From IMG/VR virus record IMGVR_UViG_3300032240_001991, positions 1 to 64,000 of that record: DNA of 64,000 nt; one strand, 5' to 3'. This document shows, piece by piece, positions 2,355 through 61,821 of this stretch (the first letter of the stretch is position 1; each line of letters begins with the position of its first letter). The notes below the pieces were generated by a model, which was not told the origin of the DNA, searched no databases, and saw only the letters and a list, made by a program, of their open reading frames with translations. Position numbers and translations under genes: made by a program.

Positions 2355-3044
2355 ATGTCTAATCCTTTTGATTTTTTTGATGAAATTTATTGTATAAATT
2401 TACCTAGCTCTGTTGAAAGATGGAATACGGTATCAGAAACATTCACTAAGTTAGGGATAATGCCTCGAGTTAAAAGAATTGTAGCAAGACCTCCAGATGC
2501 AGATATAATACAGGCTACTCCTGAAGGGCTGTTAAGATTAGGTATAAATTTTAATCCTATTGGAATGCTGGGCTGTAGCTTAAGCCATCTAAAAATTTTA
2601 ACTAAAGTTTTGAATAATCGTTCAAGTAATGTTTTAATCTTTGAAGACGATGTAATGTTTACTGATGTTTTTTCTTTTGAAAAATTAAATAACGCTATTT
2701 TAGAATTACCACCAACTTGGGATATCTTATTTTTAGGTGCTGATCCTGTACAACCAACTTTAAAATATTCAGAAAATCTTATTAAAGTTACTCATACATG
2801 GGGAAGCTATGCATATGCACTCAATCAGAAATGTATTTCACATATTTGTACTACAACAATAGATAATCTTACACAAGGTGGGCTTGATTATTGTTTATCA
2901 ATTTTTAGTTCAGACCTACTAGAAAAATTTTGCATTACTCCGCGAATGTGCACAGATTCGCCAGGAGTAAGTACAATGGACGGAATTTATCATGACTGGA
3001 ACATTGAATCAAATGCCAGATGGAACGAATTTGTGCCAAAATAA
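2355..3044 (+). CDS. Glycosyltransferase family 25
   Basis: IYCINL...ERW, GCSLSHL, LIFEDD and WDILFLG motifs. Confidence 0.85.
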   Translation: MSNPFDFFDEIYCINLPSSVERWNTVSETFTKLGIMPRVKRIVARPPDADIIQATPEGLLRLGINFNPIGMLGCSLSHLKILTKVLNNRSSNVLIFEDDVMFTDVFSFEKLNNAILELPPTWDILFLGADPVQPTLKYSENLIKVTHTWGSYAYALNQKCISHICTTTIDNLTQGGLDYCLSIFSSDLLEKFCITPRMCTDSPGVSTMDGIYHDWNIESNARWNEFVPK

Positions 3045-3054
3045 ATTAAAAGAC

Positions 3055-3540
3055 TTACTTTACAAATTGTCCGTGTTTTATAAGAATAATTTTAGCATCA
3101 CCAGATAATTCAATATCGTACTCTCTTGGTTTTAAATAATTTAATGCTCTAAGCGTTTTTCTATCTCCTGTACATTTACCTAATACACAATAAGCACCTA
3201 TGCCTTTTGGTAAAATAAATGTATCAGTAAGCCTTATAAATTCTGCTGTATAAGGTTTATAACTTGAAAAACATAACCAAGTCGTATCCTGAGGAAATAA
3301 CTCGTATGTATCAAAATTTAAAACAACACTGGTGTTTAAAAAAAATTCACCTTCAAAGATGTTGTTTAATTGAGCTGTTTTAGTTCTATATTCTTCTAAC
3401 CTTCCTCTATACATATAAGTAGCAAATAAATTTTTATCATATTCTCCTTGTCCTACTTCCCATATTCGACTACTATGATCGTTATGACCAACGACATTAA
3501 CTACAAACCCTGAATATTGAACAGTTAGAGTAGAGATCAT
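3055..3540 (-). CDS. Hypothetical protein
   Basis: 161-aa ORF coupled (ATGA overlap) to the upstream GNAT gene. Confidence 0.6.
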   Translation of the reverse strand: MISTLTVQYSGFVVNVVGHNDHSSRIWEVGQGEYDKNLFATYMYRGRLEEYRTKTAQLNNIFEGEFFLNTSVVLNFDTYELFPQDTTWLCFSSYKPYTAEFIRLTDTFILPKGIGAYCVLGKCTGDRKTLRALNYLKPREYDIELSGDAKIILIKHGQFVK

Positions 3541-4139
3541 AACTCAAAACTAAGCGGTTTAGCTTGCCCTTTTATATGACCTGATTGATTTATGGGCGTT
3601 GAAAACATTTCTAAAGTACTTAATAAGATATTAGTTGTAACTTCGCTAGCTTGATCTACATTAATATCTTGTAATAGTTTTAACCTTGCTGCATAATGCA
3701 AATAATCGTTATTATAAAGAATACTGATATTTAACGAGGATTCAAAATCAAACTCATTGTTGCGCGCATCATATGTGCCAACGACAATGTGCGACATGTT
3801 TATAATTTTCTTCCATATTGAGTTTGAATTTTTAGTCATCATAAAATCATTAACTACTGTGTATTTTTCTTTTTCTAAAAGATATCTATAAAAAAATGTA
3901 CCAATTCCTTGATTTTGATATGAATTGAGAACATGTATTTCGTACGCTTTAACGCAGTTCTTATAATCACGCATCTTCATTAACCAAAAATATCCTATCA
4001 AATTTTCATTATCGTACATTCCGTAATATATAGAAATATCAGTAATTTTTCGTTTTAATAAAAATTTATTAAAGAATGCAACTTCTGTTGCTCCTAAGAA
4101 CAGTTGAGATGCTTCGTCAAAATTTCTGAGATCTGTCAT
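3537..4139 (-). CDS. GNAT-family acetyltransferase
   Basis: IHVLNSYQNQGIGTFFY acetyl-CoA-binding motif A; start placed at MTDLRN (TAATG overlap with upstream stop). Confidence 0.7.
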   Translation of the reverse strand: MTDLRNFDEASQLFLGATEVAFFNKFLLKRKITDISIYYGMYDNENLIGYFWLMKMRDYKNCVKAYEIHVLNSYQNQGIGTFFYRYLLEKEKYTVVNDFMMTKNSNSIWKKIINMSHIVVGTYDARNNEFDFESSLNISILYNNDYLHYAARLKLLQDINVDQASEVTTNILLSTLEMFSTPINQSGHIKGQAKPLSFEL

Positions 4140-5416
4140 TAACCACATAATTTTTTTAACTCTTCTAATGCAGTTTCTATGTTTTGATAAACTAAAATTT
4201 TATTTTTGCGCAACACACGTATTCCAGGCGAATTGTTATGCCTACATACAAAAGCTGCTAGTTTACCGGTTAATAACTTTGCTATTTTTTTAGCAAATTC
4301 TTTTTCTTTCTTAGGATCTTCTTGCCCTGTTAAAAATAAAATTATTAAAAACGCATCTATACTAGTCTCATCTGCTAATAAAGAAATAATCTGATACGTT
4401 TTTTCAGAAAATCCAGCCGAAATACCAATTAAATCTATAGGATTGTTAATTTGGTTATTTGATCGATTTAAAATTTCTTGTATTTTTTGAACATCCGTTG
4501 TTGATATGTCAGTTAAATCAAATCCTTTAATTTCAGACTCACCGGCAGCAATTACTCCAAGCCCTCCGGTGTCGGTTATAATCATAATTTTCTTCTTTTC
4601 TTTTTGAAAATTATTAATAATAAGTAACGCAAATTCTTGAAGTGTAGATGCAACAACTGAATCAGCAATATTAATATTACCTAATTTAGACCCAGTATGC
4701 AATAAAGATGCTCTTTTTGATGCATTAGTAATCTTTGGTGATAAAAGTATCAGCGGTTTTGTTAATTTTATAAACGGAAGATTTATGCTTTCTTCTAAAT
4801 ATATAGCAATAACTTTAGTATCTTGATCTAAATTTAAGTAATCAATCATTGACGGAACTAGCGAAGTTTGATTTCCAATAGAAATAATTTTTGAAAATCC
4901 TAGTCCTGATGATGTTGTCATGCGCTCATGAAGATCAGCAATTACTCCGCCGCTCTGGGATATCATCCCAACGCTACCTGATACTGGAGATATTATTGGT
5001 AAACATTGAAACTTTTTTGACCAGACTCCTGCACAATTTGGGCCAATAAGCATACTACCTGCTTGAGAAATTTTTGATTTTATTCTGTTTTCAATATCAT
5101 AATTTCCGGTCTCTCGAAAACCAGTTGTAATTCCAATGATAACTTTTGTTCCGTGATTTAACAACTCGTCAATAACGGTTTCAAACACATACAGAGGAAC
5201 GGTAACAATAGCAACATCAATCTTTTCAGGTATTTCAGAAATTGAAGATAAAGAACGCTGATTAAAAATTAGTTCTCTTTGACGATTAATAAGATATACA
5301 TTTTTATCTTCAGTGTTTAATAATACTTGTTCAGTAATCCAATTTCCCCATTTTGTTACATTAGCAGACGCACCTACAACTGCAACAGATTTTGGAGAAA
5401 ATAAAACATCAAACAC
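4139..5416 (-). CDS. NDP-forming acyl-CoA synthetase (acetate-CoA ligase) alpha-subunit-like, CoA-binding protein
   Basis: LFSPKSVAVVGAS, LIGPNCAG, ISQSGG, ISIGN, LHTGS (phospho-His position), TDTGGLGV and NNPIDL motifs; GTG start at 5416 overlaps the upstream stop. Confidence 0.85.
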   Translation of the reverse strand: MFDVLFSPKSVAVVGASANVTKWGNWITEQVLLNTEDKNVYLINRQRELIFNQRSLSSISEIPEKIDVAIVTVPLYVFETVIDELLNHGTKVIIGITTGFRETGNYDIENRIKSKISQAGSMLIGPNCAGVWSKKFQCLPIISPVSGSVGMISQSGGVIADLHERMTTSSGLGFSKIISIGNQTSLVPSMIDYLNLDQDTKVIAIYLEESINLPFIKLTKPLILLSPKITNASKRASLLHTGSKLGNINIADSVVASTLQEFALLIINNFQKEKKKIMIITDTGGLGVIAAGESEIKGFDLTDISTTDVQKIQEILNRSNNQINNPIDLIGISAGFSEKTYQIISLLADETSIDAFLIILFLTGQEDPKKEKEFAKKIAKLLTGKLAAFVCRHNNSPGIRVLRKNKILVYQNIETALEELKKLCG

Positions 5417-5981
5417 GAATAATATCCCATCTTGCAACAGTGTACGGAGCATTTAATCTAAAATGAGTTCCAATATGTATCTTAGTACGTACAAATCCTA
5501 ACTTTTCAAACATTTTGTCGTATTCTTCAACTGATCGATGATATACTCCATATGGGTATGGTATACCTCTATAAGACCTTTCCATAATTTCTGCTAATAC
5601 AACGGTGTTGGTATTTTCGCATAGCCTTAGTATAATTTGATCTATTTCTTGATCATTAACCAGATGAGGACCGTTAATAAACATAGTTGTTTGACAAGGC
5701 GGTAATTCTAAAAAATTCCATGGTAAAAATCTATAAGATGGGTTTATGCGGGTTGCTTTTTTAACTGCTGACTCGCATATATCAAACCCAATATATGTTA
5801 ACGGATTAAAATTTTTAGCTAATCGACCATACCCACATCCAACATCTCTAACTGGGGAATCCCCAACAAATTCCATAACCGCTTTTACATTTTCTTCACC
5901 TTCGTAATATTCGTGACCGGTTGACCAACGAAAATAATTAATTCCTTCAGTTTTCCAAAAATTTACATCTATAGAAGTCAT
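5409..5981 (-). CDS. Class I SAM-dependent methyltransferase
   Basis: VRDVGCGYGR motif I and YIGFDI motif II; ATGA overlap start at 5981. Confidence 0.8.
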   Translation of the reverse strand: MTSIDVNFWKTEGINYFRWSTGHEYYEGEENVKAVMEFVGDSPVRDVGCGYGRLAKNFNPLTYIGFDICESAVKKATRINPSYRFLPWNFLELPPCQTTMFINGPHLVNDQEIDQIILRLCENTNTVVLAEIMERSYRGIPYPYGVYHRSVEEYDKMFEKLGFVRTKIHIGTHFRLNAPYTVARWDIIRV

Positions 5982-6736
5982 AGCTGATCCCATCCTCTTG
6001 CTATTAAATTATTTTTAAAGTCAATAGGAATTCTATCTAACACATCTAATTCTAATTTTCTTAAAAGGTCAGGTGGCGGTAATTCTTTATTTTTTACAGT
6101 TTCATATGTATTAACTTTTTCTTGAGGAAGACTTGTAACTGTTGGGAGAGAAAAGAAATTTAACATATCATTAAAATGATTCACGTCTAAAATTTTGTCA
6201 ATATTTGTTTCCCAACACAACGATCCTTTCTCTTTTGCGTAATTGTAATAATACTGTGCTCTTTTTTCGCATTCGCATGCATACCAAAAACAAAGTTGAT
6301 AGGTATGCGCCTTTTCCCAATTAGCAAACGGCAAAACATTTGGTTCGTTTGGAATATTAAACCAGCACATATAACCAGGATGTTTTCCAGGAATCCAATT
6401 TAGTTGAAAAAGGCTTGATGCTATTTTTCTAGGATTCCTACGCAATATCACAATTGTTGGAATTATGCCAAAGTCGTAAAAATATTCAAGACATCCCTTA
6501 GATACTGATTGATCTGTATTTGTGTAAGTTTTTCCTGGTAATTGTTGAATGTAGTTAAGATGTTCCTTAACAAATTTTTTTCCAATTTCAGGATTTAAAA
6601 TGTTTGCCTGTCTTACTGAGCTAAAGCTAGGTTCTCTTTCATGTTCTGAAAAATTATTAGGAACTTGAGCAAACAATCTGCTAAGTAAAAAAGTTCCAGA
6701 TCTTCCTGAAGAAATTGTTAGAGTAATTGGTTTCAT
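5978..6736 (-). CDS. Sulfotransferase-family (P-loop) protein
   Basis: ISSGRSGTFLL 5'-phosphosulfate-binding-like loop and LRRNPRKIASS 3'-phosphate-binding-like motif. Confidence 0.65.
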   Translation of the reverse strand: MKPITLTISSGRSGTFLLSRLFAQVPNNFSEHEREPSFSSVRQANILNPEIGKKFVKEHLNYIQQLPGKTYTNTDQSVSKGCLEYFYDFGIIPTIVILRRNPRKIASSLFQLNWIPGKHPGYMCWFNIPNEPNVLPFANWEKAHTYQLCFWYACECEKRAQYYYNYAKEKGSLCWETNIDKILDVNHFNDMLNFFSLPTVTSLPQEKVNTYETVKNKELPPPDLLRKLELDVLDRIPIDFKNNLIARGWDQL

Positions 6737-7326
6737 TATATTTCAATATACGATGAGTTAGCAATTGGTTTTTGCAAAGGGTCATATGCAAAACAAGTTA
6801 AAGAATATTTAATTCCTCTTTTAAGAGTATCGGTATGATGCCGATGAGTGAGCACTCCGGGCCAAAAAATTGCAGTACCTACAGGTAAATCTTTTGTGTT
6901 AAAGTTTTGACGAGGAAAATATAAATCACACCCACTAAAATCGTTATTAAGTTTAATATTACAAGAAATTAGACCAATATCAATATGAGACCTAATTTTA
7001 ACTGCGGTATCTAGGCTATATCGAAGGAAGTACGGACTAAAAAGTTTAAGATCATAAAAGAACCATTCTTTTTTAAGAAGTGGAACAACTTTAGTAAGAT
7101 AGTGATTTTTAAATTCTACAGTAAATTCTTGATCAAATGTAATTGAGTTTAAGTAGTATGTACTAAAATTCATGTCTACAGGATCTGGCGCAAACTGATG
7201 TTTTTGATTTTCAAGTCTTTCTACTAAATCTTGACAAAATTCTTTTGTCCAAAAAGGACATATTAGAATATCGTCTTTAATAGTATATTCTCCAAAATTA
7301 GAATCAATGGCACTAGTGTAATTCAT
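6736..7326 (-). CDS. 2OG-Fe(II) oxygenase, PLOD/lysyl-hydroxylase-like
   Basis: PFWTKEFC, YFLRY, HID, CNIKLNNDFSG, WPGVLTHRH and GIKYSL; HxD...H facial triad. Confidence 0.8.
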   Translation of the reverse strand: MNYTSAIDSNFGEYTIKDDILICPFWTKEFCQDLVERLENQKHQFAPDPVDMNFSTYYLNSITFDQEFTVEFKNHYLTKVVPLLKKEWFFYDLKLFSPYFLRYSLDTAVKIRSHIDIGLISCNIKLNNDFSGCDLYFPRQNFNTKDLPVGTAIFWPGVLTHRHHTDTLKRGIKYSLTCFAYDPLQKPIANSSYIEI

Positions 7327-7928
7327 GGTTTAAGAACAAAACTAACACCTGACGGATCAAACCATTGAAGAGGCGGCCAAGAAAAAGATACAAACGTATA
7401 TTTTTTCCCTTTAGTAAGTTCAGTTACATAATGAGGATGAGTTAGCATTCCCGGCCATATCATTGCATAACCAATTGGAACATCTTGTCCGCAAAACTTT
7501 TGTCGAGGAAAATGTAACTCACAGCCTTCATAATCGTCGTTTATTCTCATGTTTATAGTAATAACACCTTCGTCTGTATGTTTTAAAAGATCTCGATTTT
7601 CGTCCATTGAATAACGAACAAAATATGGAGTAAAAACACCAGGGACGTCCATTTGAACTGCTCGTTGAATCATCCATTCTTTTTTTAACATAGGAATAAT
7701 ACTATTTTTATAATGATCGGCAAAAGATACGACGTAATCTCGTCCTATATCATTTAATCTTAGTATGCGCATGTCGTCATAGGTAGTAACAAATCGGTCT
7801 GAATACCTTTCACATGCCTCAACCATTTCGGCACAAAATTCCTTTGTCCAAAAAGGAGTCACAATAATATCATTATGGATTTCATATTTTCCAAAATCAG
7901 GATGCAGACCGCTGTGGTAATGATTCAT
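7323..7928 (-). CDS. 2OG-Fe(II) oxygenase, PLOD/lysyl-hydroxylase-like (paralog)
   Basis: PFWTKEFCAEMVE, YFVRY, HTD, ITINMRINDDYEG, WPGMLTHPH and GKKYTFVSF. Confidence 0.8.
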   Translation of the reverse strand: MNHYHSGLHPDFGKYEIHNDIIVTPFWTKEFCAEMVEACERYSDRFVTTYDDMRILRLNDIGRDYVVSFADHYKNSIIPMLKKEWMIQRAVQMDVPGVFTPYFVRYSMDENRDLLKHTDEGVITINMRINDDYEGCELHFPRQKFCGQDVPIGYAMIWPGMLTHPHYVTELTKGKKYTFVSFSWPPLQWFDPSGVSFVLKP

Positions 7929-37200: not shown

Positions 37201-37884
37201 ATGCCAAAGTATACTGCACCAATTGGAATTCACGATACCTTAAATCCTAAAATATGGGACGGAGAAAGCCTCCGTCCTGAAGTTAAGAAATCTCTATTAA
37301 GAATTGCAAAAGAATTTTACAAATTTCTTAAAGTTTCTTCTCCTGTTCAGGATGTATTGTTAACTGGAAGTCAGGCCAATTACAACTATTCAAGAAACTC
37401 TGATATTGATTTGCACTTAGTTTTTGATTTTGAAAATATTGCTTGCGACGAGCCTATAAGCGAGTTGTTTGACACTAAAAGAAAGCTATGGAAAGAAAAA
37501 CATGACATCGACATCTACGGAATCCCTGTAGAAGTCTACGGCGAAGATTCAAATAATCCGTCTGTAAGTTCTGCTTATAGTCTTATTAAAGATGCATGGG
37601 TAAGAAACCCAAGTGATCCTGTAATTTCTTATAATAAAGATCGGGTAGAATACCTAACAGCTTTATGGATTAAGCTTATGGAAATATCCATTGAAAGCAA
37701 AAATCTAAAGATTTGTAATATAGTGCAACAGCTATTAGCAGACTATAGAAAAATGGGTTTGAAGGTCTACGGAGAATTTGGAGTACCAAATTTAGTATAC
37801 AAAAGTTTAAGAAATATTGGTATTATTAAACACATGAGCGATACAATTATTATGCTCACAGATGACGATTTAAGCCTTGACTAA
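37201..37884 (+). CDS. DNA polymerase beta-superfamily nucleotidyltransferase
   Basis: LTGSQANYNY...SDIDLHLV (GS + DxD) and VEVYGED. Confidence 0.75.
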   Translation: MPKYTAPIGIHDTLNPKIWDGESLRPEVKKSLLRIAKEFYKFLKVSSPVQDVLLTGSQANYNYSRNSDIDLHLVFDFENIACDEPISELFDTKRKLWKEKHDIDIYGIPVEVYGEDSNNPSVSSAYSLIKDAWVRNPSDPVISYNKDRVEYLTALWIKLMEISIESKNLKICNIVQQLLADYRKMGLKVYGEFGVPNLVYKSLRNIGIIKHMSDTIIMLTDDDLSLD

Positions 37885-37912
37885 CTGCTATTAAGATTAT
37901 ATATTACAGGTT

Positions 37913-38431
37913 ATGAAACACACAATTTATTTAGATATGGACGGCGTTGTAGCTGACTGGAACGCAGGCGTTCGAGATATTTTAGGTTATACTAAAGAAG
38001 ATCCAAACGCACACTATCCTGACGAAGACTGGAACAGAATCAAAACTAATGAACGCATGTATCGTGACCTTCCGGTTATGAAAAATGCTCAAGATTTGGT
38101 TAATATTGCAAGGCAGTTTCGAGACCGTTTAGGATGGAGATTGCTTTTTCTAACCGCGGTTCCTAAGGGTAATGACGTTCCTTGGGCATTCTGGGATAAG
38201 TGCAATTGGGCACAGAAAAATTTTCCTGATGTACCGGTACACTTTGGACCTTTTGCAAAAGATAAGCAGGTACATGCTGTAGAAGGGGATATCTTAGTTG
38301 ATGATCGTCGTAGCAATGTTGAACAGTGGCGTAGCAAGGGCGGAGTTGGAATCGAGGTCACTGAAGGTGATCTAGGCGCTGCTATTATTAAACTAAGATT
38401 ACTGTTTGATCAGAAGTTATCAGGGCGATAA
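37913..38431 (+). CDS. 5'(3')-deoxyribonucleotidase, HAD family
   Basis: IYLDMDGVVADW, FLTAVP and ILVDDR.SN..QW...GG.GI. Confidence 0.85.
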   Translation: MKHTIYLDMDGVVADWNAGVRDILGYTKEDPNAHYPDEDWNRIKTNERMYRDLPVMKNAQDLVNIARQFRDRLGWRLLFLTAVPKGNDVPWAFWDKCNWAQKNFPDVPVHFGPFAKDKQVHAVEGDILVDDRRSNVEQWRSKGGVGIEVTEGDLGAAIIKLRLLFDQKLSGR

Positions 38432-47302: not shown

Positions 47303-47968
47303 ATGAATTCTCAATACGTTAAAAGATTGCTAACACCCAGAAATATTGGTCATGAAAAGATTCGTATAGGACCCAAACATGACGGCGGTTATGTGATCAG
47401 CAAGACCTGTTTAGATCAAACTAGCGCAGTTTATTCATTGGGTATAGGTGACGAGGTAGGTTTTGATATAGATATAGCTGATCGAGGTCTAACAGTCTAT
47501 CAGTACGACGGTACCATATCTGGTACGCCCCATCCTCATAACAATTTTAAATTCAAAAGTCTTATGATGAGTTCTCAAACTCTAGCAGAAGAACTAACGG
47601 CCAATGGACATATAGATCGTAAAGATTTAATGTTAAAGATGGATATTGAAGGCGCTGAATACGAACTACTCTATCACTTGGACTGGCAGCTACTAGACTG
47701 CTTTAATCAAATTGTACTTGAACTGCATCATGTCACTAACTTTGCTATGTCAGGTACGATGTTACAGAAATTCTGTACGCAGTTTATACCTATACACGTA
47801 CACGCTAACAATAATGACTATCGTAGTGTAGATGGAGTTCCCAACATGTTAGAACTAACATTTGTCAATACCAATATGCTGGTTACGGCAGACTCATGCC
47901 CTATGCCAGGATTAGACTATCGCAACTTTGATAACTTTCACGAATTTTACCTAGACTGGTGGAAATAA
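47303..47968 (+). CDS. FkbM-like methyltransferase
   Basis: RIGPKHDGGY, YSLGIG, LKMDIEGAEY and QIVLELH. Confidence 0.75.
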   Translation: MNSQYVKRLLTPRNIGHEKIRIGPKHDGGYVISKTCLDQTSAVYSLGIGDEVGFDIDIADRGLTVYQYDGTISGTPHPHNNFKFKSLMMSSQTLAEELTANGHIDRKDLMLKMDIEGAEYELLYHLDWQLLDCFNQIVLELHHVTNFAMSGTMLQKFCTQFIPIHVHANNNDYRSVDGVPNMLELTFVNTNMLVTADSCPMPGLDYRNFDNFHEFYLDWWK

Positions 47969-47973
47969 AAATT

Positions 47974-48642
47974 ATGGATACTCAACTGATTGAAAAATTA
48001 ATTTCTCAGGTAGAAACTGCTATTACCCTTGCTGAACAAGGTCAAACTCAATTAACAGAAAAAGAACTGACCTTAGAAGGTATGAGCAGCAGAAAGAATC
48101 GTATTTTTTTAAACGAGCTAGTAAAAAATCCTAACACTCGTTATTTAGAAATTGGTACTTGGCGCGGCAGCACTTTGGTCTCAGCACTATACCGTAACAG
48201 TCCCCAATTAGCTGTAGCTATTGATAATTTTAGCCAGTTTGATGCTGACCAATCTCAGCTACTAACCAACTGTAAAAATAGCGGACTGGAAGAAGGTAAA
48301 GATTTTCAGTTTATCAATCAAGATTGTTTTAACCTAACACCAGAACAAAAAGCTCAAATCAAAGATATCACCGTATACTTTTATGACGGTGACCATAGGC
48401 CTATAGATCAAGAAATGGCACTGACTTACTATCTAGATCACATGGCGGATTATTTTATATTCATAGTAGATGATTGGGATTACTCTGAAGTAAAACAAGG
48501 TACTAGATCAGCACTATATAAAATGCCAGTATCTGTGCACAAAGAGTGGCAGCTGCTCGGAGGTTGGCCTCACAACACAGCTAACACTTGGTGGAATGGA
48601 TTATACGTGGGCGTATTAAGTAAAAAATCTCTAGGAAGATAA
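47974..48642 (+). CDS. Class I SAM methyltransferase (Methyltransf_24-like)
   Basis: YLEIGTWRGST, AIDNFS, YFYDGDH and IVDDW. Confidence 0.75.
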   Translation: MDTQLIEKLISQVETAITLAEQGQTQLTEKELTLEGMSSRKNRIFLNELVKNPNTRYLEIGTWRGSTLVSALYRNSPQLAVAIDNFSQFDADQSQLLTNCKNSGLEEGKDFQFINQDCFNLTPEQKAQIKDITVYFYDGDHRPIDQEMALTYYLDHMADYFIFIVDDWDYSEVKQGTRSALYKMPVSVHKEWQLLGGWPHNTANTWWNGLYVGVLSKKSLGR

Positions 48643-48646
48643 AATT

Positions 48647-49300
48647 ATGCAGATCAGTTACGGACCAATTGAATTAGGCAGACATCAGATAAGGCAAGAG
48701 ATCATAAAGGCAAAGACTGCTACTACAGCAGAATGTCGAGTTATAGATCTTGGTGCCGTAGCAGGACAAGGATGGGCCAGTGATTTAACTGATTTAGTAA
48801 TAGATATCAATGCTAATCCTTTAGACAGTCGCGCACTGGCGTTAGACATATGTGATCCTGAAACATGGGATCAGCTGTTTGATCTAGTAGAAAAGCAGGG
48901 TCTTTTTGACTATGCCATATGCACACATACCTTAGAAGATCTGTATGATCCTATAATGGCTCTGCGATATCTACCCAAAATTGCCAAAGCTGGAGCTATA
49001 TCTATGCCCAGCCTACAGACTGAGCTCTGCAGAGAAGATGATCCTAGATTTTTAGGCTACATACATCATCGTTGGCTTTTTGATCAAGAAGATGGTCAAA
49101 TGCTGTTAGCACCTAAACTTACTTGCTTAGAATCCATCATGAATCCGCCCACTAAGTATAATCCACAACATCAAGAAATACTCTATCGATGGCAGGGTTC
49201 TATTCCCTATAAGATGTTTATGAACAACTATCTAGGCCCGGATACTAATACGGTTATGAACACGTTTAGACAGTTTATCAAGGACAGGGTAACCTTTTAG
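48647..49300 (+). CDS. Methyltransferase-like protein
   Basis: VIDLGAVAG and FDYAICTHTLEDL.DP. Confidence 0.55.
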   Translation: MQISYGPIELGRHQIRQEIIKAKTATTAECRVIDLGAVAGQGWASDLTDLVIDINANPLDSRALALDICDPETWDQLFDLVEKQGLFDYAICTHTLEDLYDPIMALRYLPKIAKAGAISMPSLQTELCREDDPRFLGYIHHRWLFDQEDGQMLLAPKLTCLESIMNPPTKYNPQHQEILYRWQGSIPYKMFMNNYLGPDTNTVMNTFRQFIKDRVTF

Positions 49301-51720: not shown

Positions 51721-51981
51721 TAGAGAGTGGAGAACCGTACCCCTGGTGATTTTACTACCTTGGTTTTAAAAAACGGCTGCTGCTGCTTAAGTTGCTAATC
51801 TGCGCTAACGCAAGCCTTTTCCTCGGGGTCCACCAGACCCCACCTCAACCAGGGAGACCACCAGACCCCACTATTTCAGCTTTAGCAGAATTTTTGAATT
51901 TTTTTGGTTGACAGAGGAGATGAGAGGGCGCACACGCCCCTCTCAAGCGTGTGCGCTCTGCAGTCTATAAGCAGTGTAGTG

Positions 51982-52215
51982 TTAGGCTGCGTGCTCTATA
52001 GCGGGCAGCGGAAACTCCTTACGCTGATAGTACTCTACCAGCTGCCGCATGATAACAGCGATCTGCTCGCCTTCTTCGCTAACAGTGAAGCGCACGGGAC
52101 TGTGGCGCCAGCTGTTGGTACGCATGAACTCTGTAAACAATCGACGGTGGCGGTTGTTGTTGACATCAAAGTGTGTGATGGGACGCACGGTGCGTGCTGT
52201 AGCAATGTTACGCAT
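51982..52215 (-). CDS. Small early hypothetical protein (paralog of 61612..61821)
   Basis: RP...FD..N..HRR.FT.FMRT..W.H.PVRF shared; own promoter. Confidence 0.65.
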   Translation of the reverse strand: MRNIATARTVRPITHFDVNNNRHRRLFTEFMRTNSWRHSPVRFTVSEEGEQIAVIMRQLVEYYQRKEFPLPAIEHAA

Positions 52216-52250: not shown

Positions 52251-52279
52251 GTTATACAGTCTAGCCGCTGAGTCCGCAA
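52251..52279 (-). promoter_or_regulatory. sigma70-like early promoter
   Basis: TTGCGG-17-TATAAC. Confidence 0.55.
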
Positions 52280-52435
52280 TGGGTTTATGGGGTGGGCCCC
52301 ATAAAAAAATAACGGTTGCAGACCTGCTGATGAGATGCTAGCGGTGCCCCAGACGCCTACGGGAGGACGCGGGCTTAACACCGTGCGGGCAGGGTTGCAA
52401 GCAATATTTTTTTACGCAAGTGTAAAAAAATATAG

Positions 52436-52464
52436 TTGCACAAGCACTAGCATGGCGCTACTAT
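52436..52464 (+). promoter_or_regulatory. sigma70-like early promoter
   Basis: TTGCAC-17-TACTAT. Confidence 0.55.
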
Positions 52465-52505
52465 TAACGGGCTGCAATGTAGCAGCGCACTAGTAGTACA
52501 AGCAT

Positions 52506-52820
52506 ATGCAAACACAAGCACAAACAACAACAGCCACTGCGCCGCGCGTAAAGCGCAAGTATACAAAGCGTAGCCTGCGCATTGTTACCGCTAACGACGC
52601 CAACACTGCAACCGCTACTGCAAAGCGCAACAGCGCACTGCACACGCAGCGTATGTTAAACTTTGCTACTGCGCAAAGCGCACAGCAAATTAACAAAGCA
52701 CTGTATACAAGCAAAGTACGCTACCTGCAGGCCTGCATTGCGCACAACACAGCAATGCAGCAGTTGCAAGCGCAAATTACTGCGCACTTGCTAAACGTAG
52801 CAGCGCACATACAGTACTAA
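52506..52820 (+). CDS. Small basic early protein (no Glu, one Asp)
   Basis: 104-aa ORF between a promoter and a terminator hairpin. Confidence 0.55.
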   Translation: MQTQAQTTTATAPRVKRKYTKRSLRIVTANDANTATATAKRNSALHTQRMLNFATAQSAQQINKALYTSKVRYLQACIAHNTAMQQLQAQITAHLLNVAAHIQY

Positions 52821-52837
52821 CTGCTACTGCACTGCAC

Positions 52838-52873
52838 AAAACGCACACGCTATGCAAGTAGCGTGTGCGTTTT
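52838..52873. terminator. Perfect 15-bp hairpin, probable bidirectional terminator
   Basis: AAAACGCACACGCTA-tgcaag-TAGCGTGTGCGTTTT. Confidence 0.7.
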
Positions 52874-53455
52874 CGCGTCTGCCCGCTGCACACACTGCAA
52901 AACAACAACTTACGCGCTGGCTAGCTCTGGGGCGCGCTGATCTACTGTATATATGCACAGTAGCAAAACTTTGCAGTCGTTGGGCCTGGGGCACTGCTAA
53001 ACAAGTTTGTGCTGTGGTGAGCGGGCTGAGTGCACTCTGCTGGGGCATCAGCAATCCCATGAATACTGCAGATATCTGTACAACAATACAGTGTGTTTGC
53101 GTGCCTAAGCACAGTAATAGCCGCCCTAAATTAAAAATTTAAGCAGCAGTTTCTTTGTCGTAGTTGTGGGGCAGGATCGTAGGTCTAGTTACTACAAAGT
53201 AAGAGATCTTACCCGGTGGTCGTGGGGACATTAGAGGCCAAACGCGCAAAATTTTTTTACAGATCAGTAAATGCAGAGCTCTCGGTCATGGGGCGTGCAG
53301 ACCCCACTGATCGCTGGAATTAGGCCTAAGAGAGGGCGGTCTGCGGACCCCAGGCAGCAGAAAGCATGAGCAGAGGTTACCCCATAGTACCCAAAATACC
53401 AGCGAGAGATACCCCATGTTGCACAAAAAATCCAGCAAAATATCCCAGAAAACAG

Positions 53456-53483
53456 TTGCGTGCAGCAGCAAAGAGTGTATAGT
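53456..53483 (+). promoter_or_regulatory. sigma70-like early promoter
   Basis: TTGCGT-16-TATAGT with TG immediately upstream of the -10 hexamer. Confidence 0.55.
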
Positions 53484-53524
53484 AACTGGGCTGCAACGTA
53501 GCAGCGACACTAGCAGTAGTAAAA

Positions 53525-54082
53525 ATGCAACAAAACGACGTAGCGCAACAAGTAGCGCAGTTGTTGGCTAACACAAGCGTGACCTTTGCTTGTGTGGCCT
53601 ACAGCACCCCGGTTAAACTAGCGGCTAAAAACAAGCACTTAACTGTGCAGAAGCACACTGTGGCAAACGTGCAACTGTTTGCTAACATTAACGCAGCAAC
53701 CAGCGTGTACGCTAATGCAGTTAAGCGTAGTGCAGCCACACACACCACAAACAGCCCCGCAGCAGTCGCAGAGTTCGCTGCGCAGAGTAACTACTACGAG
53801 CACACTGACTGCTACAGCATTGTGCAGCATAAAAACAACAGTAACCTGTACTTGTACTGCATTTATAACCGCGCACGCAGCAGTTACACCATTGACGGCG
53901 CCCCGGCTAGCCGACAAGATGTAGCAGCCCTGCTAACACCCAGCGCAGCAGAGCAGTTGTTGCATAGCAACAACGTAGTGCATAATGCCGCGCATAACAT
54001 TACGCATAGCGTAATCGTGCGTACTATTGCACTTAGCAACATCAAGCAAATCCGTGCTCGCCGGCAGCAACTGACTTTTTAG
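53525..54082 (+). CDS. Early hypothetical protein
   Basis: 185-aa ORF with an upstream promoter and a downstream hairpin (54109-54137). Confidence 0.65.
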   Translation: MQQNDVAQQVAQLLANTSVTFACVAYSTPVKLAAKNKHLTVQKHTVANVQLFANINAATSVYANAVKRSAATHTTNSPAAVAEFAAQSNYYEHTDCYSIVQHKNNSNLYLYCIYNRARSSYTIDGAPASRQDVAALLTPSAAEQLLHSNNVVHNAAHNITHSVIVRTIALSNIKQIRARRQQLTF

Positions 54083-54217
54083 CAAAAAGCAGCAGCAGCT
54101 GGCGTTAGTAGTAGCGGGGCATCGCGTCCCGCTACTAGTGCTGAGTGCAGGAAACTTCGCCCAGCAAGGGTTCGTTGGGCTGGTGGGGTTTGCCCCAGAC
54201 TTCTCAGAAACCCAACG

Positions 54218-54651: not shown

Positions 54652-54992
54652 CCCAAGTTTACACAAAGTTTTAAGCTGGCGCGCTCCGTAGCAGTATGGG
54701 GCGCGCGGCCTCACCTCTCCTGGCTCAAAAAATCTGTCTCTCTCAAAATGTAAACACTTACTGGTTCAAGGGGTATACCCCACAACCTAAGGTGGACCTA
54801 GTGCACAGTTTTTGTTTGTTAGTTCTAGTACGCACAACTTAGCAGTTGCCTAAACAACAAACTGTTAGCACACGCGATCTTCCAGTGATAGCGGGGTATG
54901 TGTGCCCCTATAGGCAGCTTGAAGAACGGCAACGGGCTTAAAAATTGTTATAGCAACGCTCACCGCACGCACACGTTAGCTCGGGAAACCAT

Positions 54993-55056: not shown

Positions 55057-55248
55057 ATGCTAGTGCTCACACGGCGCCCCGAGGAAGGCATCTGGCTGGG
55101 AGAAGACATCTGCATACGAATTGTTGCTATCAAAGGCAACCAAGTCCGTATTGCTATCGACGCCCCTAGTACAGTAAAGATACTGCGTACAGAACTATTA
55201 GACTTGACAGAAACTGTACAAAAACAGTTGACACACAAACACTACTAA
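55057..55248 (+). CDS. csrA: Carbon storage regulator CsrA/RsmA RNA-binding protein
   Basis: MLVLTRRPEEGI...I.IRIVAIKGNQVRIAIDAP.TVKILR.EL matches the CsrA consensus; AAGGA SD. Confidence 0.92.
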   Translation: MLVLTRRPEEGIWLGEDICIRIVAIKGNQVRIAIDAPSTVKILRTELLDLTETVQKQLTHKHY

Positions 55249-56037: not shown

Positions 56038-56065
56038 TTGTAATGTTTAAGCGTTATGTTATAAT
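56038..56065 (+). promoter_or_regulatory. Strong sigma70-like promoter with no downstream ORF
   Basis: TTGTAA-16-TATAAT with extended TG. Confidence 0.55.
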
Positions 56066-56069
56066 TTGC

Positions 56070-56225
56070 AAAATAACAACAACACACGACGCCGTACGAC
56101 TTACGTGGTGAGCTAGAGTTTGCCGGGGTCCGCAACCCTACGTAGCAAGCGCATTTTTAGTACGCATTAGTAGTTACACACGCACATAGCGGACTCCTGT
56201 ACCGATGGGGTTATTGGTACTGTTG
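56070..56225 (+). ncRNA. Candidate structured non-coding RNA
   Basis: Helix GGGGTCCGC (56125-33)/GCGGACTCC (56189-97) and hairpin 56199-56220; no ORF. Confidence 0.3.
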
Positions 56226-56669
56226 TGCATTAAGTTTTTTTAATGTTGTGCGCTGTAAGAAACCCCAAGATAGCCTCTTGCGTACTGCTGTGCAGTTGTG
56301 CTATAAATTAACTTAATGCAGCGCAACTTAACTTAACGTAGCAACATAATATGTTGCAACGCACAAAGACAAGTGCTGTAGCGATGGGAGGAAAAAAACA
56401 GCGACGGGACTGAACAGCCCCTCACCGGCGGCGGTTCTGTAGAGACAGGCGCCTTCGTGGCGCGAGATCTGGCTAGGGCCAGTAGTCCTGACCCCGCCCT
56501 GCGCAGCTAGAAGCCTATCAACGATTTCTCAAGGACCAAGAACCCGGATGTTTCCATTGCAGTCAACGCTACAACAGAGATAACAATAAAGACTGCGATC
56601 TTAGATACAAAGGCAGTAAAGCGTACCATGTGCGTGTGTCCCGTTGGGTAGAGCTTGCGAATTCTTGCG

Positions 56670-60486: not shown

Positions 60487-60562
60487 TGGTGGGTCCTGAG
60501 GGGTTCGAACCCTCGACAAACGGATTAAAAGTCCGCTGCTCTACCGACTGAGCTAAGGACCC
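60487..60562 (-). tRNA. trnK: tRNA-Lys (anticodon TTT) with encoded CCA
   Basis: GGGTCCTTAGCTCAGTCGGTAGAGCAGCGGACTTTTAATCCGTTTGTCGAGGGTTCGAACCCCTCAGGACCCACCA folds as a 76-nt cloverleaf. Confidence 0.95.
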
Positions 60563-61360: not shown

Positions 61361-61559
61361 AATTGAAGTCCTCTAGTATTAGATCACTATCTTCTTCGTC
61401 CTCAATCTCCTGATCAAGGTCAAAGAACTCGTTAGTGTGACAGAGGTCTTTGACTTCGCTTTCGCTCATGTACTTGACACAGGCCGTAATCACAGTGTCC
61501 TTGTCCAGGACGCCCTCTTCAATCAGCTCTAGCAAGCGATTAGTGTATTCACGAACCAT
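61335..61559 (-). CDS. Small hypothetical protein
   Basis: REYTNRLLEL.EEG.LD.D.VI.AC.KYMSE.EV; AAGGAG SD. Confidence 0.6.
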   Translation of the reverse strand: MVREYTNRLLELIEEGVLDKDTVITACVKYMSESEVKDLCHTNEFFDLDQEIEDEEDSDLILEDFNYVGSRHHY

Positions 61560-61586
61560 CAGCTGCTCCTTACTAACTATGCGGGT

Positions 61587-61615
61587 ACTATACAGCCATT
61601 TGCGGCCAATGTCAA
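61587..61615 (-). promoter_or_regulatory. sigma70-like early promoter overlapping the upstream stop codon
   Basis: GGTTGACA-17-TATAGT. Confidence 0.7.
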
Positions 61616-61821
61616 CCAAACTCTCGTTCAGCGTAGTACTCTAGGATCTGCCGCTGAATGTTAGGGATCAGTTCCCCGTCCTCCTTGACTTCAAAGCGTA
61701 CAGGGCAATGACCCCACGCAGAGGTCCTCATGAAGTCCGTGAACCACCGGCGGTGGTCCGTGTTCTGGGCATCAAAGATCACAAGCGGACGTTTGACAAA
61801 GGCCAGTTTAGAACGTAGCAT
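61612..61821 (-). CDS. Small hypothetical protein (paralog of 51982..52215)
   Basis: Shared RP..FD..N..HRR.F..FMRT..W..PVRF motif; start placed at MLRSKL. Confidence 0.65.
   Translation of the reverse strand: MLRSKLAFVKRPLVIFDAQNTDHRRWFTDFMRTSAWGHCPVRFEVKEDGELIPNIQRQILEYYAEREFG

What the first reader, a model, noticed from the sequence alone, without database searches (positions are those of the whole stretch)
52369..54082. Near-total avoidance of GA/TC dinucleotides in two early gene cassettes
Seen by manual count: 52369-52872 (~500 nt: promoter, gene, terminator) contains one GA (52596) and no TC, against roughly 60 expected for GA+TC. Gene 53525-54082 has about 18 against roughly 70 expected. 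The constraint overrides protein sequence: the 104-aa product has no Glu, one Asp and only AGY Ser codons. It covers non-coding DNA too, stops abruptly, and partly recurs at ~54800-54990 and ~56040-56390. Hypotheses: (1) first-entering DNA purged of sites for restriction or modification-sensing systems (GATC, GANTC, GAAC/GTTC all contain GA/TC). (2) The phage hypermodifies bases in a GA context (7-deazaguanine modification at GA motifs is known in some phages) and keeps the earliest host-RNAP-transcribed genes unmodified. (3) Escape from TC-specific deaminases or ADP-ribosyltransferases, or from UV TC lesions. The pattern is certain; the cause is inference.
Basis: partly seen in the sequence, partly recalled or inferred. 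Interest (0 to 1): 0.82.

Follow-up and report, generated by a model that had tools for sequence, protein, structure and literature searches.

The report
Dinucleotide-free early genes in jumbo phages
Two small early-type gene cassettes of an uncultured 327-kb phage belong to a widespread class of phage transcription units that selection keeps completely free of particular dinucleotides (GA/TC here, GA/GG/TC/CC in relatives). The constraint is strong enough to remove Gly, Pro, Asp, Glu and Trp from the encoded proteins, which points to an unidentified enzyme that acts on nucleic acid in a two-base context.

Summary
Window 52367-52872 (promoter, 104-aa gene, terminator) holds 1 GA and 0 TC, against 61 expected. 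Recoding the same protein with the genome's codon usage gives 19, never fewer than 8. Gene 53525-54082 holds 18 against 37.

The 185-aa product defines a family of at least 193 clusters in uncultured phages related to PA5oct. In 32 of 71 distinct homologous genes GA, GG, TC and CC are all absent or nearly so, despite a median 36% DNA divergence. Other lineages avoid only TC+CC on the sense strand, only CC+GG, or nothing.

The free zone runs from about 50 nt upstream of the start of transcription to the terminator. Short spacers between cassettes still carry these dinucleotides. The encoded proteins lose exactly the amino acids whose codons are forbidden.

This is purifying selection at nucleotide level, tied to transcription units. 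Sense-strand YC (which equals GR on the template strand) has priority.

The cause is not identified. My best reading is DNA kept blank for an enzyme that acts on G in a GA/GG context. Phage DpdA 7-deazaguanine systems share that motif, but no such genes were found. RNA-level toxins, Rho evasion and restriction or PAM avoidance fit less well.

The parts
52367..52872 (+). Cassette 1: a GA/TC-free zone covering a whole transcription unit
   Evidence: 1 GA and 0 TC against 61 expected. The edges lie at 52366 and 52873.
52436..52464 (+). Predicted sigma-70-type promoter of cassette 1: TTGCAC, 17-nt spacer, TACTAT, preceded by an A/T tract
   Evidence: Read from the sequence. It falls below the stringency of the scan tool. 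The same layout occurs in relatives.
52471..52486 (+). Leader hairpin at the predicted 5' end of the transcript, shared with cassette 2
   Evidence: 19-nt repeat at 95% identity between 52469-52487 and 53488-53506. It folds as a 5-bp stem.
52506..52820 (+). 104-aa ORF with no Shine-Dalgarno sequence, no Glu/Gly/Trp, 1 Asp and 1 Pro
   Evidence: Orthologues at 70-72% identity sit next to the 185-aa gene in L002/L003. No PHROG match.
52838..52877 (+). Intrinsic terminator with 15-bp perfect arms, flanked by an A-run and a T-run (so it reads as bidirectional)
   Evidence: Inverted repeat I12. Folding energy -27.3 kcal/mol, z-score -5.2.
53456..53483 (+). Predicted promoter of cassette 2: TTGCGT, 16-nt spacer, TATAGT
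   Evidence: Read from the sequence.
53490..53505 (+). Leader hairpin of cassette 2
53525..54082 (+). 185-aa 'marker' gene, partly relaxed: GA 12, TC 6, GG 8, CC 25
   Evidence: GA/TC is 18 against 37.2 for the same protein recoded. More than 355 homologues in 193 clusters at 50% identity. AlphaFold pLDDT 82, with no PDB fold match.
54111..54135 (+). 3' hairpin of cassette 2, without a T-run
   Evidence: Folding energy -28.6 kcal/mol, z-score -3.5.
56280..56370 (+). Short stretch free of GA, GG, TC and CC in non-coding DNA; possibly the remnant of a cassette
   Evidence: Weak evidence.

Best explanation
**Shown.**
- The two cassettes are members of a class of self-contained early-type transcription units: promoter, leader, small ORF, terminator.
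- They occur in uncultured jumbo phages related to PA5oct.
- Purifying selection keeps them free of the base-pair step 5'-GR-3'/5'-YC-3'.
- Sense-strand YC, which is the same thing as GR on the template strand, is purged in all such units.
- Sense-strand GR is purged as well in a stricter subset. That subset gives up its Shine-Dalgarno sequence and the residues Asp, Glu, Gly and Trp.
- In this phage the constraint has narrowed to GA/TC and is decaying in the second gene.

**Inferred.**
- The units are 'blank' DNA for an enzyme that alters the G of a GA/GG step (or its paired C) in DNA.
- Blank DNA would let host RNA polymerase bind the promoter and read an unaltered template for the first proteins the phage needs.
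- The leading candidate is the phage's own sequence-context-specific G modification. DpdA-type 7-deazaguanine replacement has exactly these motifs.
- In that case the unmodified patches would be immune to whatever blocks or attacks modified DNA.

**My confidence by layer.**
- About 0.85 that this is selection against a dinucleotide-specific nucleic-acid-targeting activity.
- About 0.5 that the level of action is DNA.
- About 0.3 that the agent is the phage's own G modification.
For: **Selection, not chance or composition.**
- Codon-level controls.
- 32 fully free genes differ at a median 36% of nucleotide positions yet hold 0-6 GR/YC. The same number of random substitutions gives 80-120. 53% of all single changes would create one.
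- Only CC, TC, GG and GA show more than a handful of 300-nt-free runs among the 16 dinucleotides (83-141 runs each; CG has 4, GC 2, CT and TA 1 each, the other eight none).

**Nucleotide level, not codon level.**
- All three codon phases and the untranslated regions are empty.
- Residual GA sits almost only in Asp/Glu codons: 93 of 104.
- Amino-acid alphabets follow the forbidden codons state by state.

**DNA level rather than RNA level.**
- Promoters are empty too. From -50 to -1, the strict class has YC 0 against 104 expected and GR 2 against 109. The sense-only class has YC 9 against 125.
- The partial states are Watson-Crick pairs: CC with GG in five loci and GA with TC in the window. TC+GG and CC+GA never occur.

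**Template strand first.**
- In YC-free runs that keep normal GR, the longest ORF is on the same strand in 28 of 35 cases. In GR-free runs that keep YC, the ORF is on the opposite strand in 3 of 3.

**Bounded by transcription units.**
- The 3' edge lies 10-25 nt after the terminator.
- Spacers between cassettes carry G and C runs.

**Motif precedent.**
- DpdA replaces G at GA in phage iggy (97% of sites; PMC10484667).
- It replaces G at GA plus GGC in CAjan (PMC7544227).
- These match the window state (GA only) and the relatives' state (GA+GG).

**A lineage trait that comes and goes.**
- The state is lineage-specific, derived and repeatedly lost, as expected for a trait tied to an accessory gene set.
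Against: - No TGT/DpdA, FolE, QueC, QueD or QueE was found among the window ORFs scanned with Pfam. None was found in the further 20 kb of this contig, nor by tblastn in about 1.05 Mb of held sequence. About 240 kb of the genome was not seen.
- Replication genes, which must also be read from the injected DNA, carry normal GR on their template strand (window 25-37 kb).
- 7-deazaguanine groups lie in the major groove and are not known to stop RNA polymerase (established knowledge).
- The split into a sense-YC-only class and an all-four class within one phage is not explained. Removable GG is not avoided in the first class, and removable GA is avoided only about two-fold.
- Giving up the Shine-Dalgarno sequence is a high price if only the non-template strand is at stake. 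That fits an RNA-level hit better.
Confidence: 0.3

Rival explanations
1. A host-encoded enzyme hits incoming or transcribed phage DNA in a two-base context. Examples would be a DNA ADP-ribosyltransferase, a nickase, a glycosylase or a single-strand-DNA cytosine deaminase. The first-expressed genes, presumably its inhibitors, are immune because they lack the target.
For: - It rests on the same DNA-level evidence as the best explanation.
- Anti-phage enzymes with short contexts are known. DarT2 acts at TNTC/TCTN in single-stranded DNA, DarT1 at G, and ScARP/Scabin at both G and C (PMC12945103).
- Many sense-YC-only genes encode acidic proteins (15% Asp+Glu). That would suit DNA-mimic decoys.
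Against: - No known enzyme has GR/YC specificity.
- An enzyme specific for single-stranded DNA would reach the displaced non-template strand. A G-targeting one would then make sense-strand GR the primary constraint, which is the opposite of what is seen.
- A sporadic host defence is an unlikely driver of such costly recoding across phages from many lakes and seas.
- The rest of the genome would still be hit.
Confidence: 0.2
2. The agent acts on RNA. The mRNAs lack the cleavage or modification sites of a dinucleotide-specific RNase or mRNA ADP-ribosyltransferase. That enzyme could be a host abortive-infection or CRISPR effector, or the phage's own host-shutoff weapon, possibly the 185-aa protein itself. 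The cassette mRNAs would then be the only ones still translated.
For: - The primary constraint is on the sense strand and ends at the terminator.
- The strict class has no Shine-Dalgarno sequence (3 of 42, against 34 of 44 in the other class).
- Residual GA occurs only where Asp or Glu is needed.
- Precedents exist. CmdT modifies A in GA of single-stranded mRNA and blocks translation (PMC11618068). Cas13b orthologues prefer UC or GA (PMC10196884).
- The 185-aa protein is well folded, has invariant His, Cys, Lys and Arg residues and, in the strict state, no acidic residues. The avoidance state tracks its phylogeny.
Against: - Promoter DNA from -50 to -1 is as empty as the transcript.
- The partial states are complementary pairs.
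- Two separate agents would be needed.
- The few residual TC lie in terminator loops, not in stems.
- The phage's own middle and late mRNAs would be destroyed too.
Confidence: 0.2
3. The transcripts evade Rho. They contain no 5'-YC dimers, which are what the primary RNA-binding clefts of Rho hold, so immediate-early RNAs cannot be terminated prematurely.
For: - The match is exact: YC, sense strand, transcribed region.
- C content is normal (19-22%), but every C follows a purine.
- Rho's clefts bind 5'-YC (PMC6144790).
- In T4, Rho limits transcription to immediate-early RNA in vitro (PMC2988021).
- mRNAs without a Shine-Dalgarno sequence would be especially exposed to Rho.
Against: - Rho needs several spaced YC dimers, so a single one should be neutral. 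Yet counts are zero across 36% divergence.
- The window's own cassette 1 keeps 9 CC.
- The CC+GG-only lineage keeps normal TC.
- GR avoidance and empty promoters are not explained. G-rich motifs actually hinder Rho.
Confidence: 0.08
4. This is classical avoidance of restriction sites or CRISPR PAMs in the DNA that enters the cell first, as in the T5 first-step-transfer region (established knowledge).
For: - Many restriction sites and several PAMs contain GA/TC or GG/CC.
- The marker gene lies within 10 kb of a contig end in 7 of 12 contigs of at least 60 kb (2.2 expected, p=0.002).
- The nearest cultured relative, PA5oct, has a 39-kb terminal repeat full of small genes.
Against: - The strand-specific class cannot result from recognition of double-stranded sites.
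- The spacers between cassettes are full of GG/CC and GA/TC.
- Other palindromes such as GCGC, CTGCAG and TGCA are frequent inside the islands.
- Whole-dinucleotide removal far exceeds what any set of sites requires.
Confidence: 0.07
5. The cause lies in translation or RNA pairing. mRNAs that can neither pair with the anti-Shine-Dalgarno sequence (no GG/GA) nor mimic it (no CC/UC) might escape a phage CsrA-like or RegB-like shutoff of Shine-Dalgarno-dependent translation.
For: - The avoided dinucleotides are those of GGAGG and CCUCC.
- The strict class lacks a Shine-Dalgarno sequence, while the other class uses GGAG.
- A CsrA-like gene lies 1 kb downstream in the window.
- CsrA and Rho are known to act together on one transcript (PMC4052769).
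Against: - Removing every GA and GG goes far beyond removing GGA or GGAG.
- AG and CU are not avoided.
- Promoters are empty too.
- The CsrA-like gene was not found in the other loci.
Confidence: 0.05
6. There is no selection for avoidance. The pattern would instead be a mutational footprint (deaminase or UV damage at YC), a low-complexity origin, or import from a donor genome with odd composition.
For: - YC is the hotspot of APOBEC-type deaminases and of UV (6-4) photoproducts (established knowledge).
- The islands have higher G+C than their surroundings.
Against: - C content is normal and TT is only mildly raised.
- The proteins are conserved and confidently folded.
- Zero counts persist over deep divergence.
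- TT and AA, the main sites of UV dimers, are not avoided.
- Independent assemblies from JGI, ENA, Logan and GOS show the same pattern.
Confidence: 0.03

Closest known systems
DpdA-type 7-deazaguanine DNA modification of phages (CAjan, iggy)
   Same: It acts on G in a two-base context: GA (iggy), or GA plus GGC (CAjan). These match the GA-only state of the window and the GA+GG state of its relatives. It is lineage-specific accessory equipment of phages.
   Different: No dpdA or preQ0 genes were seen here. In CAjan and iggy the modification is spread over the whole genome, and neither paper mentions motif-free islands in the passages I read. All GG is avoided here, not only GGC.
Restriction-site-free first-entering DNA (T5 first-step-transfer region, T7 early region)
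   Same: Early genes are protected by the absence of target sequences. There is a possible position near a genome end.
   Different: Here the unit is a dinucleotide and the count is zero. The zone is bounded by single transcription units and is strand-hierarchical. It also reshapes the amino-acid alphabet.
Target-free mRNAs of mRNA-interferase or mRNA-modifying systems (ACA-less mRNAs with MazF; GA sites of CmdT)
   Same: The logic is that a message lacking the enzyme's short motif stays translatable. CmdT gives a real GA-specific example.
   Different: The free zone here includes the promoter DNA and shows complementary-pair states, which do not fit an RNA-only target.
Rho utilisation sites (5'-YC dimers)
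   Same: The dinucleotide and the strand are the same.
   Different: The avoidance here is absolute rather than graded. GR avoidance, the CC+GG-only state and the empty promoters are not predicted.
T4-type mobile early cassettes (promoter-early stem-loop modules)
   Same: Small ORFs each have their own early promoter and stem-loop terminator. They are arranged in tandem, duplicated and shuffled.
   Different: No dinucleotide avoidance has been described for those modules, as far as I know and as far as the paper searches showed.
Dinucleotide depletion in viruses under host pressure (APOBEC TC footprints, CpG and ZAP)
   Same: A virus lowers the frequency of a two-base motif that a host factor recognises.
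   Different: Those are partial, genome-wide biases. This one is complete, local and strand-ordered.

Membership tests
DpdA / 7-deazaguanine modification system | The phage encodes a TGT-like DpdA and preQ0 synthesis genes (FolE, QueC, QueD, QueE) | tested here: inconclusive
   None found among the 60 window ORFs scanned with Pfam. None at contig positions 64-83.5 kb. None by tblastn with the CAjan proteins in 1.05 Mb of held sequence. About 240 kb of the genome was not seen.
DpdA / 7-deazaguanine modification system | G replaced at GA (and GGC) sites in virion DNA | not testable with these tools
   This needs native-DNA sequencing or mass spectrometry.
DpdA / 7-deazaguanine modification system | Sequence context GA, with or without GG(C) | tested here: met
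   The avoided steps are GA/TC in the window and GA+GG/TC+CC in relatives. This is a match of motif only.
Restriction-site or PAM avoidance in first-entering DNA | Strand-symmetric loss of the sites | tested here: not met
   44 ORFs are YC-free on the sense strand with normal GR.
Restriction-site or PAM avoidance in first-entering DNA | A continuous tract of DNA is protected, regardless of gene boundaries | tested here: not met
   The free zones start about 50-75 nt before the transcription start and end 10-25 nt after the terminator. The spacers between them are rich in GG/CC.
Restriction-site or PAM avoidance in first-entering DNA | Location at the genome end that enters the cell first | tested here: inconclusive
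   The gene lies near a contig end in 7 of 12 long contigs (p=0.002), but at 53.5 kb in this 327-kb contig. True genome ends are unknown.
Target-free mRNAs (RNase or mRNA ADP-ribosyltransferase immunity) | Avoidance confined to the transcribed sense strand | tested here: not met
   The sense strand has priority, but the promoter from -50 to -1 is empty (0 of 104 and 2 of 109 expected). The strict class is empty on both strands. The transcription starts are predicted, not mapped.
Rho-resistant transcripts | Depletion of 5'-YC in the RNA | tested here: met
   21 YC in 39 kb of cassette ORFs, with C at 19-22%. These ORFs were picked for having at most 1 YC each, so the low count is by construction.
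Rho-resistant transcripts | Graded effect: several YC are needed for Rho loading, so a few should be tolerated; no constraint on GR | tested here: not met
   Counts are zero over 36% divergence. GR is also purged in 42 ORFs. The CC+GG-only lineage keeps TC.
Deaminase or UV mutational footprint | Loss of C, gain of the products TT/CT (AA/AG), and erosion of the protein | tested here: not met
   C is 19-22%. TT is 1.4-1.5 times expected and CT 0.9-1.0. The proteins are conserved and fold confidently.
T4-type early promoter/stem-loop cassettes | Small ORF flanked by its own sigma-70-type promoter and a stem-loop terminator, repeated in arrays | tested here: met
   Window cassettes. L006 holds an array with 13 terminator motifs and 6 near-identical promoters.
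T4 endonuclease IV (DenB, a dC-specific single-strand-DNA nuclease, 185 aa) | Sequence homology of the 185-aa protein to DenB | tested here: not met
   hhalign probability 0.1, BLASTP E=24. No DenB homologue in held sequence. The equal length is a coincidence.

The most novel reading that the evidence does not exclude
A group of jumbo phages carries, or always faces, a so far undescribed enzyme that acts on nucleic acid in the context of a single base-pair step (GR/YC, with GA-only and GG-only variants). These phages have built a set of 'stealth' first-responder genes that are invisible to it. In doing so they produced natural, folded, conserved proteins written in a 15-letter alphabet without Gly, Pro, Asp, Glu and Trp, translated without a Shine-Dalgarno sequence. 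The 185-aa marker protein may itself be the enzyme or its inhibitor.
Probability: 0.45. Interest if true: 0.92.

Novelty: new variant of a known kind. Interest (0 to 1): 0.86.

Why it matters
1. **A sequence-only signature.** Complete absence of YC, with or without GR, from promoter to terminator marks a special class of early phage genes. It could be used to mine metagenomes for first-responder or anti-defence genes that have no homologues.
2. **An unknown agent.** The pattern implies a strong, still unknown selective agent with two-base specificity. The agent could be a new DNA modification context, a new defence or a new host-shutoff weapon. The lineage states (all four, GA/TC, GG/CC, none) give a ready-made comparative test.
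3. **A natural experiment in reduced amino-acid alphabets.** The same protein family exists with and without Asp, Glu, Gly, Pro and Trp. Asp-to-Asn and Glu-to-Gln replacements occur at conserved positions.
4. **Translation signals.** It shows that phage genes in hosts that use Shine-Dalgarno sequences can do entirely without them.

Tried and rejected
- **Similarity to cultured phages.** DNA and protein searches of the cassettes and of four other island proteins against 50,697 phage records found nothing.
- **Family and structure searches.** PHROGs, Pfam, PDB sequence, PDB fold and ESM Atlas searches of the 185-aa protein gave no function. Only uncharacterised viral proteins share the fold.
- **Other databases.** Rfam shows no RNA family in 49-62 kb other than the tRNA. 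No copy of the family exists in 185,579 bacterial and archaeal genomes, so there is no host clue.
- **Flanking genes.** Families shared among loci are ordinary: DnaB, primase, AAA ATPase, ClpP and a cell-wall hydrolase.
- **PA5oct.** Its first 50 kb, including the 39-kb terminal repeat, has no island. The longest YC-free run is 187 nt.
- **Walking along the contig.** Positions 64-83.5 kb hold no further island and no modification gene. I stopped there because each step added only 10 kb.
- **DenB.** It is not related to the 185-aa family.
- **A single symmetric constraint?** I tested whether one symmetric constraint, overridden only by essential Asp, Glu and Gly codons, explains the sense-only class. 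It does not. Removable GG is not avoided and removable GA is avoided only two-fold.
- **Antisense 'families'.** The antisense ORF families in the clustering are artefacts of conserved DNA that lacks TCA.
- **Tree of near relatives.** It suggested that the avoidance is ancestral. The library-wide search shows instead that it is derived within a mostly normal family.
- **Literature.** Paper searches found no description of dinucleotide-free phage genes.
Full report
**1. The observation**

The window is positions 1-64000 of a 326,658-bp viral contig (IMGVR_UViG_3300032240_001991, also Ga0335271_1015169). It carries T4-type genes: sheath, gp15-like, gp19-like, TerL, gp32, a UvsX-like RecA, UvsW, primase and DnaB. 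Its large terminase is 54% identical to that of the jumbo phage PA5oct.

Between 52367 and 52872 there is one GA and no TC. Shuffling the bases gives 61.2 ± 6.1, with a minimum of 38. Only four other gaps in the 64 kb reach 70 nt (116, 92, 87 and 77 nt), and all four also lie between 53.0 and 56.4 kb. The longest gap outside 52-57 kb is 69 nt.

The zone holds a whole unit:
- an A/T tract;
- a promoter, TTGCAC-17-TACTAT;
- a small leader hairpin;
- a 104-aa ORF with no Shine-Dalgarno sequence;
- a 15-bp perfect terminator (-27.3 kcal/mol, z-score -5.2).

The same protein recoded with the genome's codon usage would hold 19 GA/TC, never fewer than 8 in 2000 trials. The 191 non-coding bases hold none, against about 20 expected.

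The second unit, gene 53525-54082, has the same leader motif. Its depletion is weaker: 18 against 37 for the recoded protein. TC is almost absent over its first 490 nt.

GG/CC is also rare. In this phage that follows from amino-acid composition alone.

**2. The pattern is conserved and stronger elsewhere**

The 185-aa product has more than 355 relatives at 90% clustering and 193 clusters at 50%. None carries an informative name (those named at all are only 'hypothetical protein') and none has a Pfam domain. None occurs in cultured phages or in bacterial genomes.

I fetched 98 loci that encode it. Among 71 distinct genes:

| State | Genes | Description |
|---|---|---|
| All four free | 32 | At most 4 YC and at most 4 GR in about 520 nt; several have exactly zero against about 120 expected |
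| Sense YC only | 3 | For example GA 24, TC 0, GG 15-18, CC 0 |
| CC+GG only | 5 | Normal GA and TC |
| No avoidance | 10 | |
| Intermediate | 21 | Includes the window's copy |

Cassette 1 is syntenic in the nearest relatives L002 and L003 at 70-72% amino-acid identity. In L003 both cassettes are free of all four dinucleotides.

Across 671 kb of loci, only CC, TC, GG and GA show more than a handful of runs of at least 300 nt without them (141, 128, 108 and 83 runs). CG has 4, GC 2, CT and TA 1 each, and the other eight none.

**3. It is selection at the nucleotide level**

- The 32 fully free genes differ at a median 36% of positions.
- The same number of random substitutions would create 80-120 GR/YC per gene.
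- 53% of all possible single changes, and half of the synonymous ones, would create one.
- All three codon phases and the untranslated regions are empty.
- Where a few GA remain, 93 of 104 are the first two bases of Asp or Glu codons.

The amino-acid alphabet follows the forbidden codons:

| State | Asp % | Glu % | Gly % | Pro % | Trp % |
|---|---|---|---|---|---|
| All four free | 0.3 | 0.1 | 0.0 | 0.1 | 0.0 |
| CC+GG only | 7.0 | 4.6 | 0.5 | 0.0 | 0.0 |
| Sense YC only | 3.7 | 3.2 | 3.2 | 0.0 | 0.5 |
| No avoidance | 4.0 | 5.8 | 3.2 | 1.9 | 0.2 |

At conserved positions Asp becomes Asn and Glu becomes Gln. The protein still gives a confident model (pLDDT 82, pTM 0.76). Its fold is shared only with uncharacterised viral proteins.

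Library-wide, most of the family has normal composition: 103 of 133 representatives. The avoidance is therefore derived. The tree of near relatives also shows reversals, including the window's own long branch.

In the window's cassette 1, 19 GG/CC have returned against 1 GA/TC. GA/TC is therefore still under selection there, while GG/CC is not.

**4. Anatomy of the constraint**

In relatives the cassettes form arrays. L006 holds about ten units over 8 kb. Each unit has:
- a terminator;
- a roughly 55-nt spacer with G and C runs;
- an A/T tract;
- a near-consensus promoter;
- a leader hairpin;
- a small ORF.

GR/YC occurs only in the spacers.

The 3' edge of the free zone lies 10-25 nt after the terminator. 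The 5' edge lies 50-75 nt before the predicted transcription start. Within -50 to -1, the strict class has 0 YC and 2 GR against 104 and 109 expected from local base composition. The other class has 9 YC against 125.

I found 108 distinct YC-free ORFs, which fall into three groups.

*Strict class (42 ORFs):*
- They lack GR as well.
- They almost never have a Shine-Dalgarno-like motif (3 of 42).
- They use -35 boxes of the TTGCAN type.

*Sense-only class (44 ORFs):*
- They keep GR at near-normal levels.
- They use a GGAG Shine-Dalgarno sequence (34 of 44).
- About a third use TTGAC -35 boxes.
- They encode acidic proteins, about 15% Asp+Glu.

*Intermediate (22 ORFs).*

In the sense-only class, removable GA is only about two-fold depleted and removable GG is not depleted at all. 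The two classes are therefore genuinely different, not one constraint overridden by protein needs.

Runs free of GR that keep YC hold genes on the opposite strand (3 of 3). Runs free of YC that keep GR hold genes on the same strand (28 of 35).

Clean combinations seen in 300-nt windows:
- all four free: 40 loci;
- TC+CC: 27 loci;
- CC+GG: 5 loci;
- GA+GG: 4 loci, all minus-strand genes;
- TC+GG or CC+GA: never.

**5. What this allows and excludes**

*Codon, tRNA or amino-acid explanations.* Excluded, because all phases, the untranslated regions and the promoters are affected.

*A mutational footprint of a deaminase or of UV.* Contradicted by four results:
- C content is normal (19-22%).
- The expected products rise only mildly.
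- The proteins are conserved.
- TT is not avoided.

*Restriction-site or PAM avoidance in first-entering DNA.*
- Contradicted by the strand-specific class and by the GR/YC-rich spacers.
- One element survives: the gene sits within 10 kb of a contig end in 7 of 12 contigs of at least 60 kb (2.2 expected, p=0.002).
- PA5oct has a 39-kb terminal repeat packed with small genes.

*Rho evasion.*
- It fits the identity of the dinucleotide exactly: Rho's clefts bind 5'-YC (PMC6144790). In T4, Rho restricts transcription to immediate-early RNA (PMC2988021).
- However, Rho needs several YC, so it predicts depletion rather than zero.
- It does not explain GR avoidance, the CC+GG lineage, the empty promoters, or the 9 CC left in the window's own cassette.

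*RNA-level single-hit agents.*
- They have real precedents: CmdT at GA in mRNA (PMC11618068), and Cas13b orthologues that prefer UC or GA (PMC10196884).
- They explain the loss of the Shine-Dalgarno sequence well.
- They do not explain the empty promoter DNA or the complementary-pair states.

*A DNA-level agent that acts on the G of a GR step.*
- It explains the pairs, the promoters, the transcription-unit bounds and the priority of the template strand.
- It does not explain why some genes also clean the non-template strand at such cost.

*Known enzymes with this context.* Phage DpdA transglycosylases replace G at GA in iggy (PMC10484667) and at GA plus GGC in CAjan (PMC7544227). That mirrors the GA-only and GA+GG states here. 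I found no DpdA or preQ0 genes in 84 kb of this genome or in about 1 Mb of flanks. About 240 kb of the genome was not read, so the link rests on motif identity alone.

**6. Verdict**

The finding is real, statistically overwhelming, conserved and under selection. As far as my searches show, it has not been described.

The window itself shows a late, relaxed form: GA/TC only, with the second gene decaying. Its relatives show the full phenomenon.

My layered estimates for the mechanism:
- about 0.85 that these are target-free early transcription units shaped by a dinucleotide-specific nucleic-acid-targeting activity;
- about 0.5 that the target is DNA;
- about 0.3 that it is the phage's own G modification.

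The split into two classes and the identity of the agent remain open.

Noticed in passing
window 55057-55248 (+): A 63-aa CsrA-like RNA-binding regulator (phrog_9500, E=5e-15; Pfam CsrA in the contig's gene calls) lies 1 kb downstream of the cassettes. CsrA binds GGA motifs, which the strict cassettes lack. It was not found in the other loci.
   Followed up: partly
L006 7585-7640, 8189-8245, 8775-8830, 9649-9716 and others; window 52270-52400, 53280-53400, 54111-54200: A conserved spacer of about 55 nt sits between cassettes. It has runs GCGGG, GCCCCA, (CCCCGC) and TGGGGC that could pair as a hairpin or pseudoknot. It is the only place in the arrays where GG/CC occur. Similar G/C-run elements flank the window's cassettes. 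Its function is unknown; it might be an insulator, a processing site or a protein-binding site.
   Followed up: partly
window 60487-60562 (-): A tRNA-Lys(UUU) gene. This is the tRNA species cut by anticodon nucleases such as PrrC, so it is a possible counter-defence tRNA.
   Followed up: no
window 2355-7928 and 47303-49300: Two clusters of tailoring enzymes. The first holds a GT25 glycosyltransferase, a GNAT, a CoA-ligase-like protein, a SAM methyltransferase and a 2OG-oxygenase-like protein. The second holds three more methyltransferases (FkbM type and others). They look like sugar or small-molecule tailoring rather than DNA-base modification, but their substrates are unknown.
   Followed up: no
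contigs; PA5oct 1-39080 (L101): The 185-aa gene lies within 10 kb of a contig end in 7 of 12 contigs of at least 60 kb (p=0.002). PA5oct, the nearest cultured relative, has a 39-kb terminal repeat filled with small genes. The cassette arrays may lie at or next to terminal repeats.
   Followed up: partly
window 51825-51871 and 53289-53307: A 19-nt motif (GGGGTCCACCAGACCCCAC and variants) occurs three times in the intergenic DNA around the cassettes (repeat family D6).
   Followed up: no
window 51982-52215 (-) and about 61540-61710 (-): The 77-aa ORF next to cassette 1 has a 57%-identical paralogue about 9.5 kb away (L001 18094-18267) and weak relatives in L043 and L082.
   Followed up: no
window 52873-53455: About 580 nt separate the two cassettes here, whereas they are adjacent in L003. 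This stretch has no homologue in any fetched locus. It may be an insertion or a decayed cassette.
   Followed up: partly
L018, L093-L098 islands (for example L095 1-2566): In one lineage, islands of 1.8-2.5 kb holding several genes have no CC and almost no GG but normal GA and TC. Their proteins lack Gly, Pro and Trp while keeping Asp and Glu.
   Followed up: partly
window 37201-38431: A nucleotidyltransferase (poly(A)-polymerase-like fold) sits next to a 5'-deoxynucleotidase (NT5C) in the replication module.
   Followed up: no
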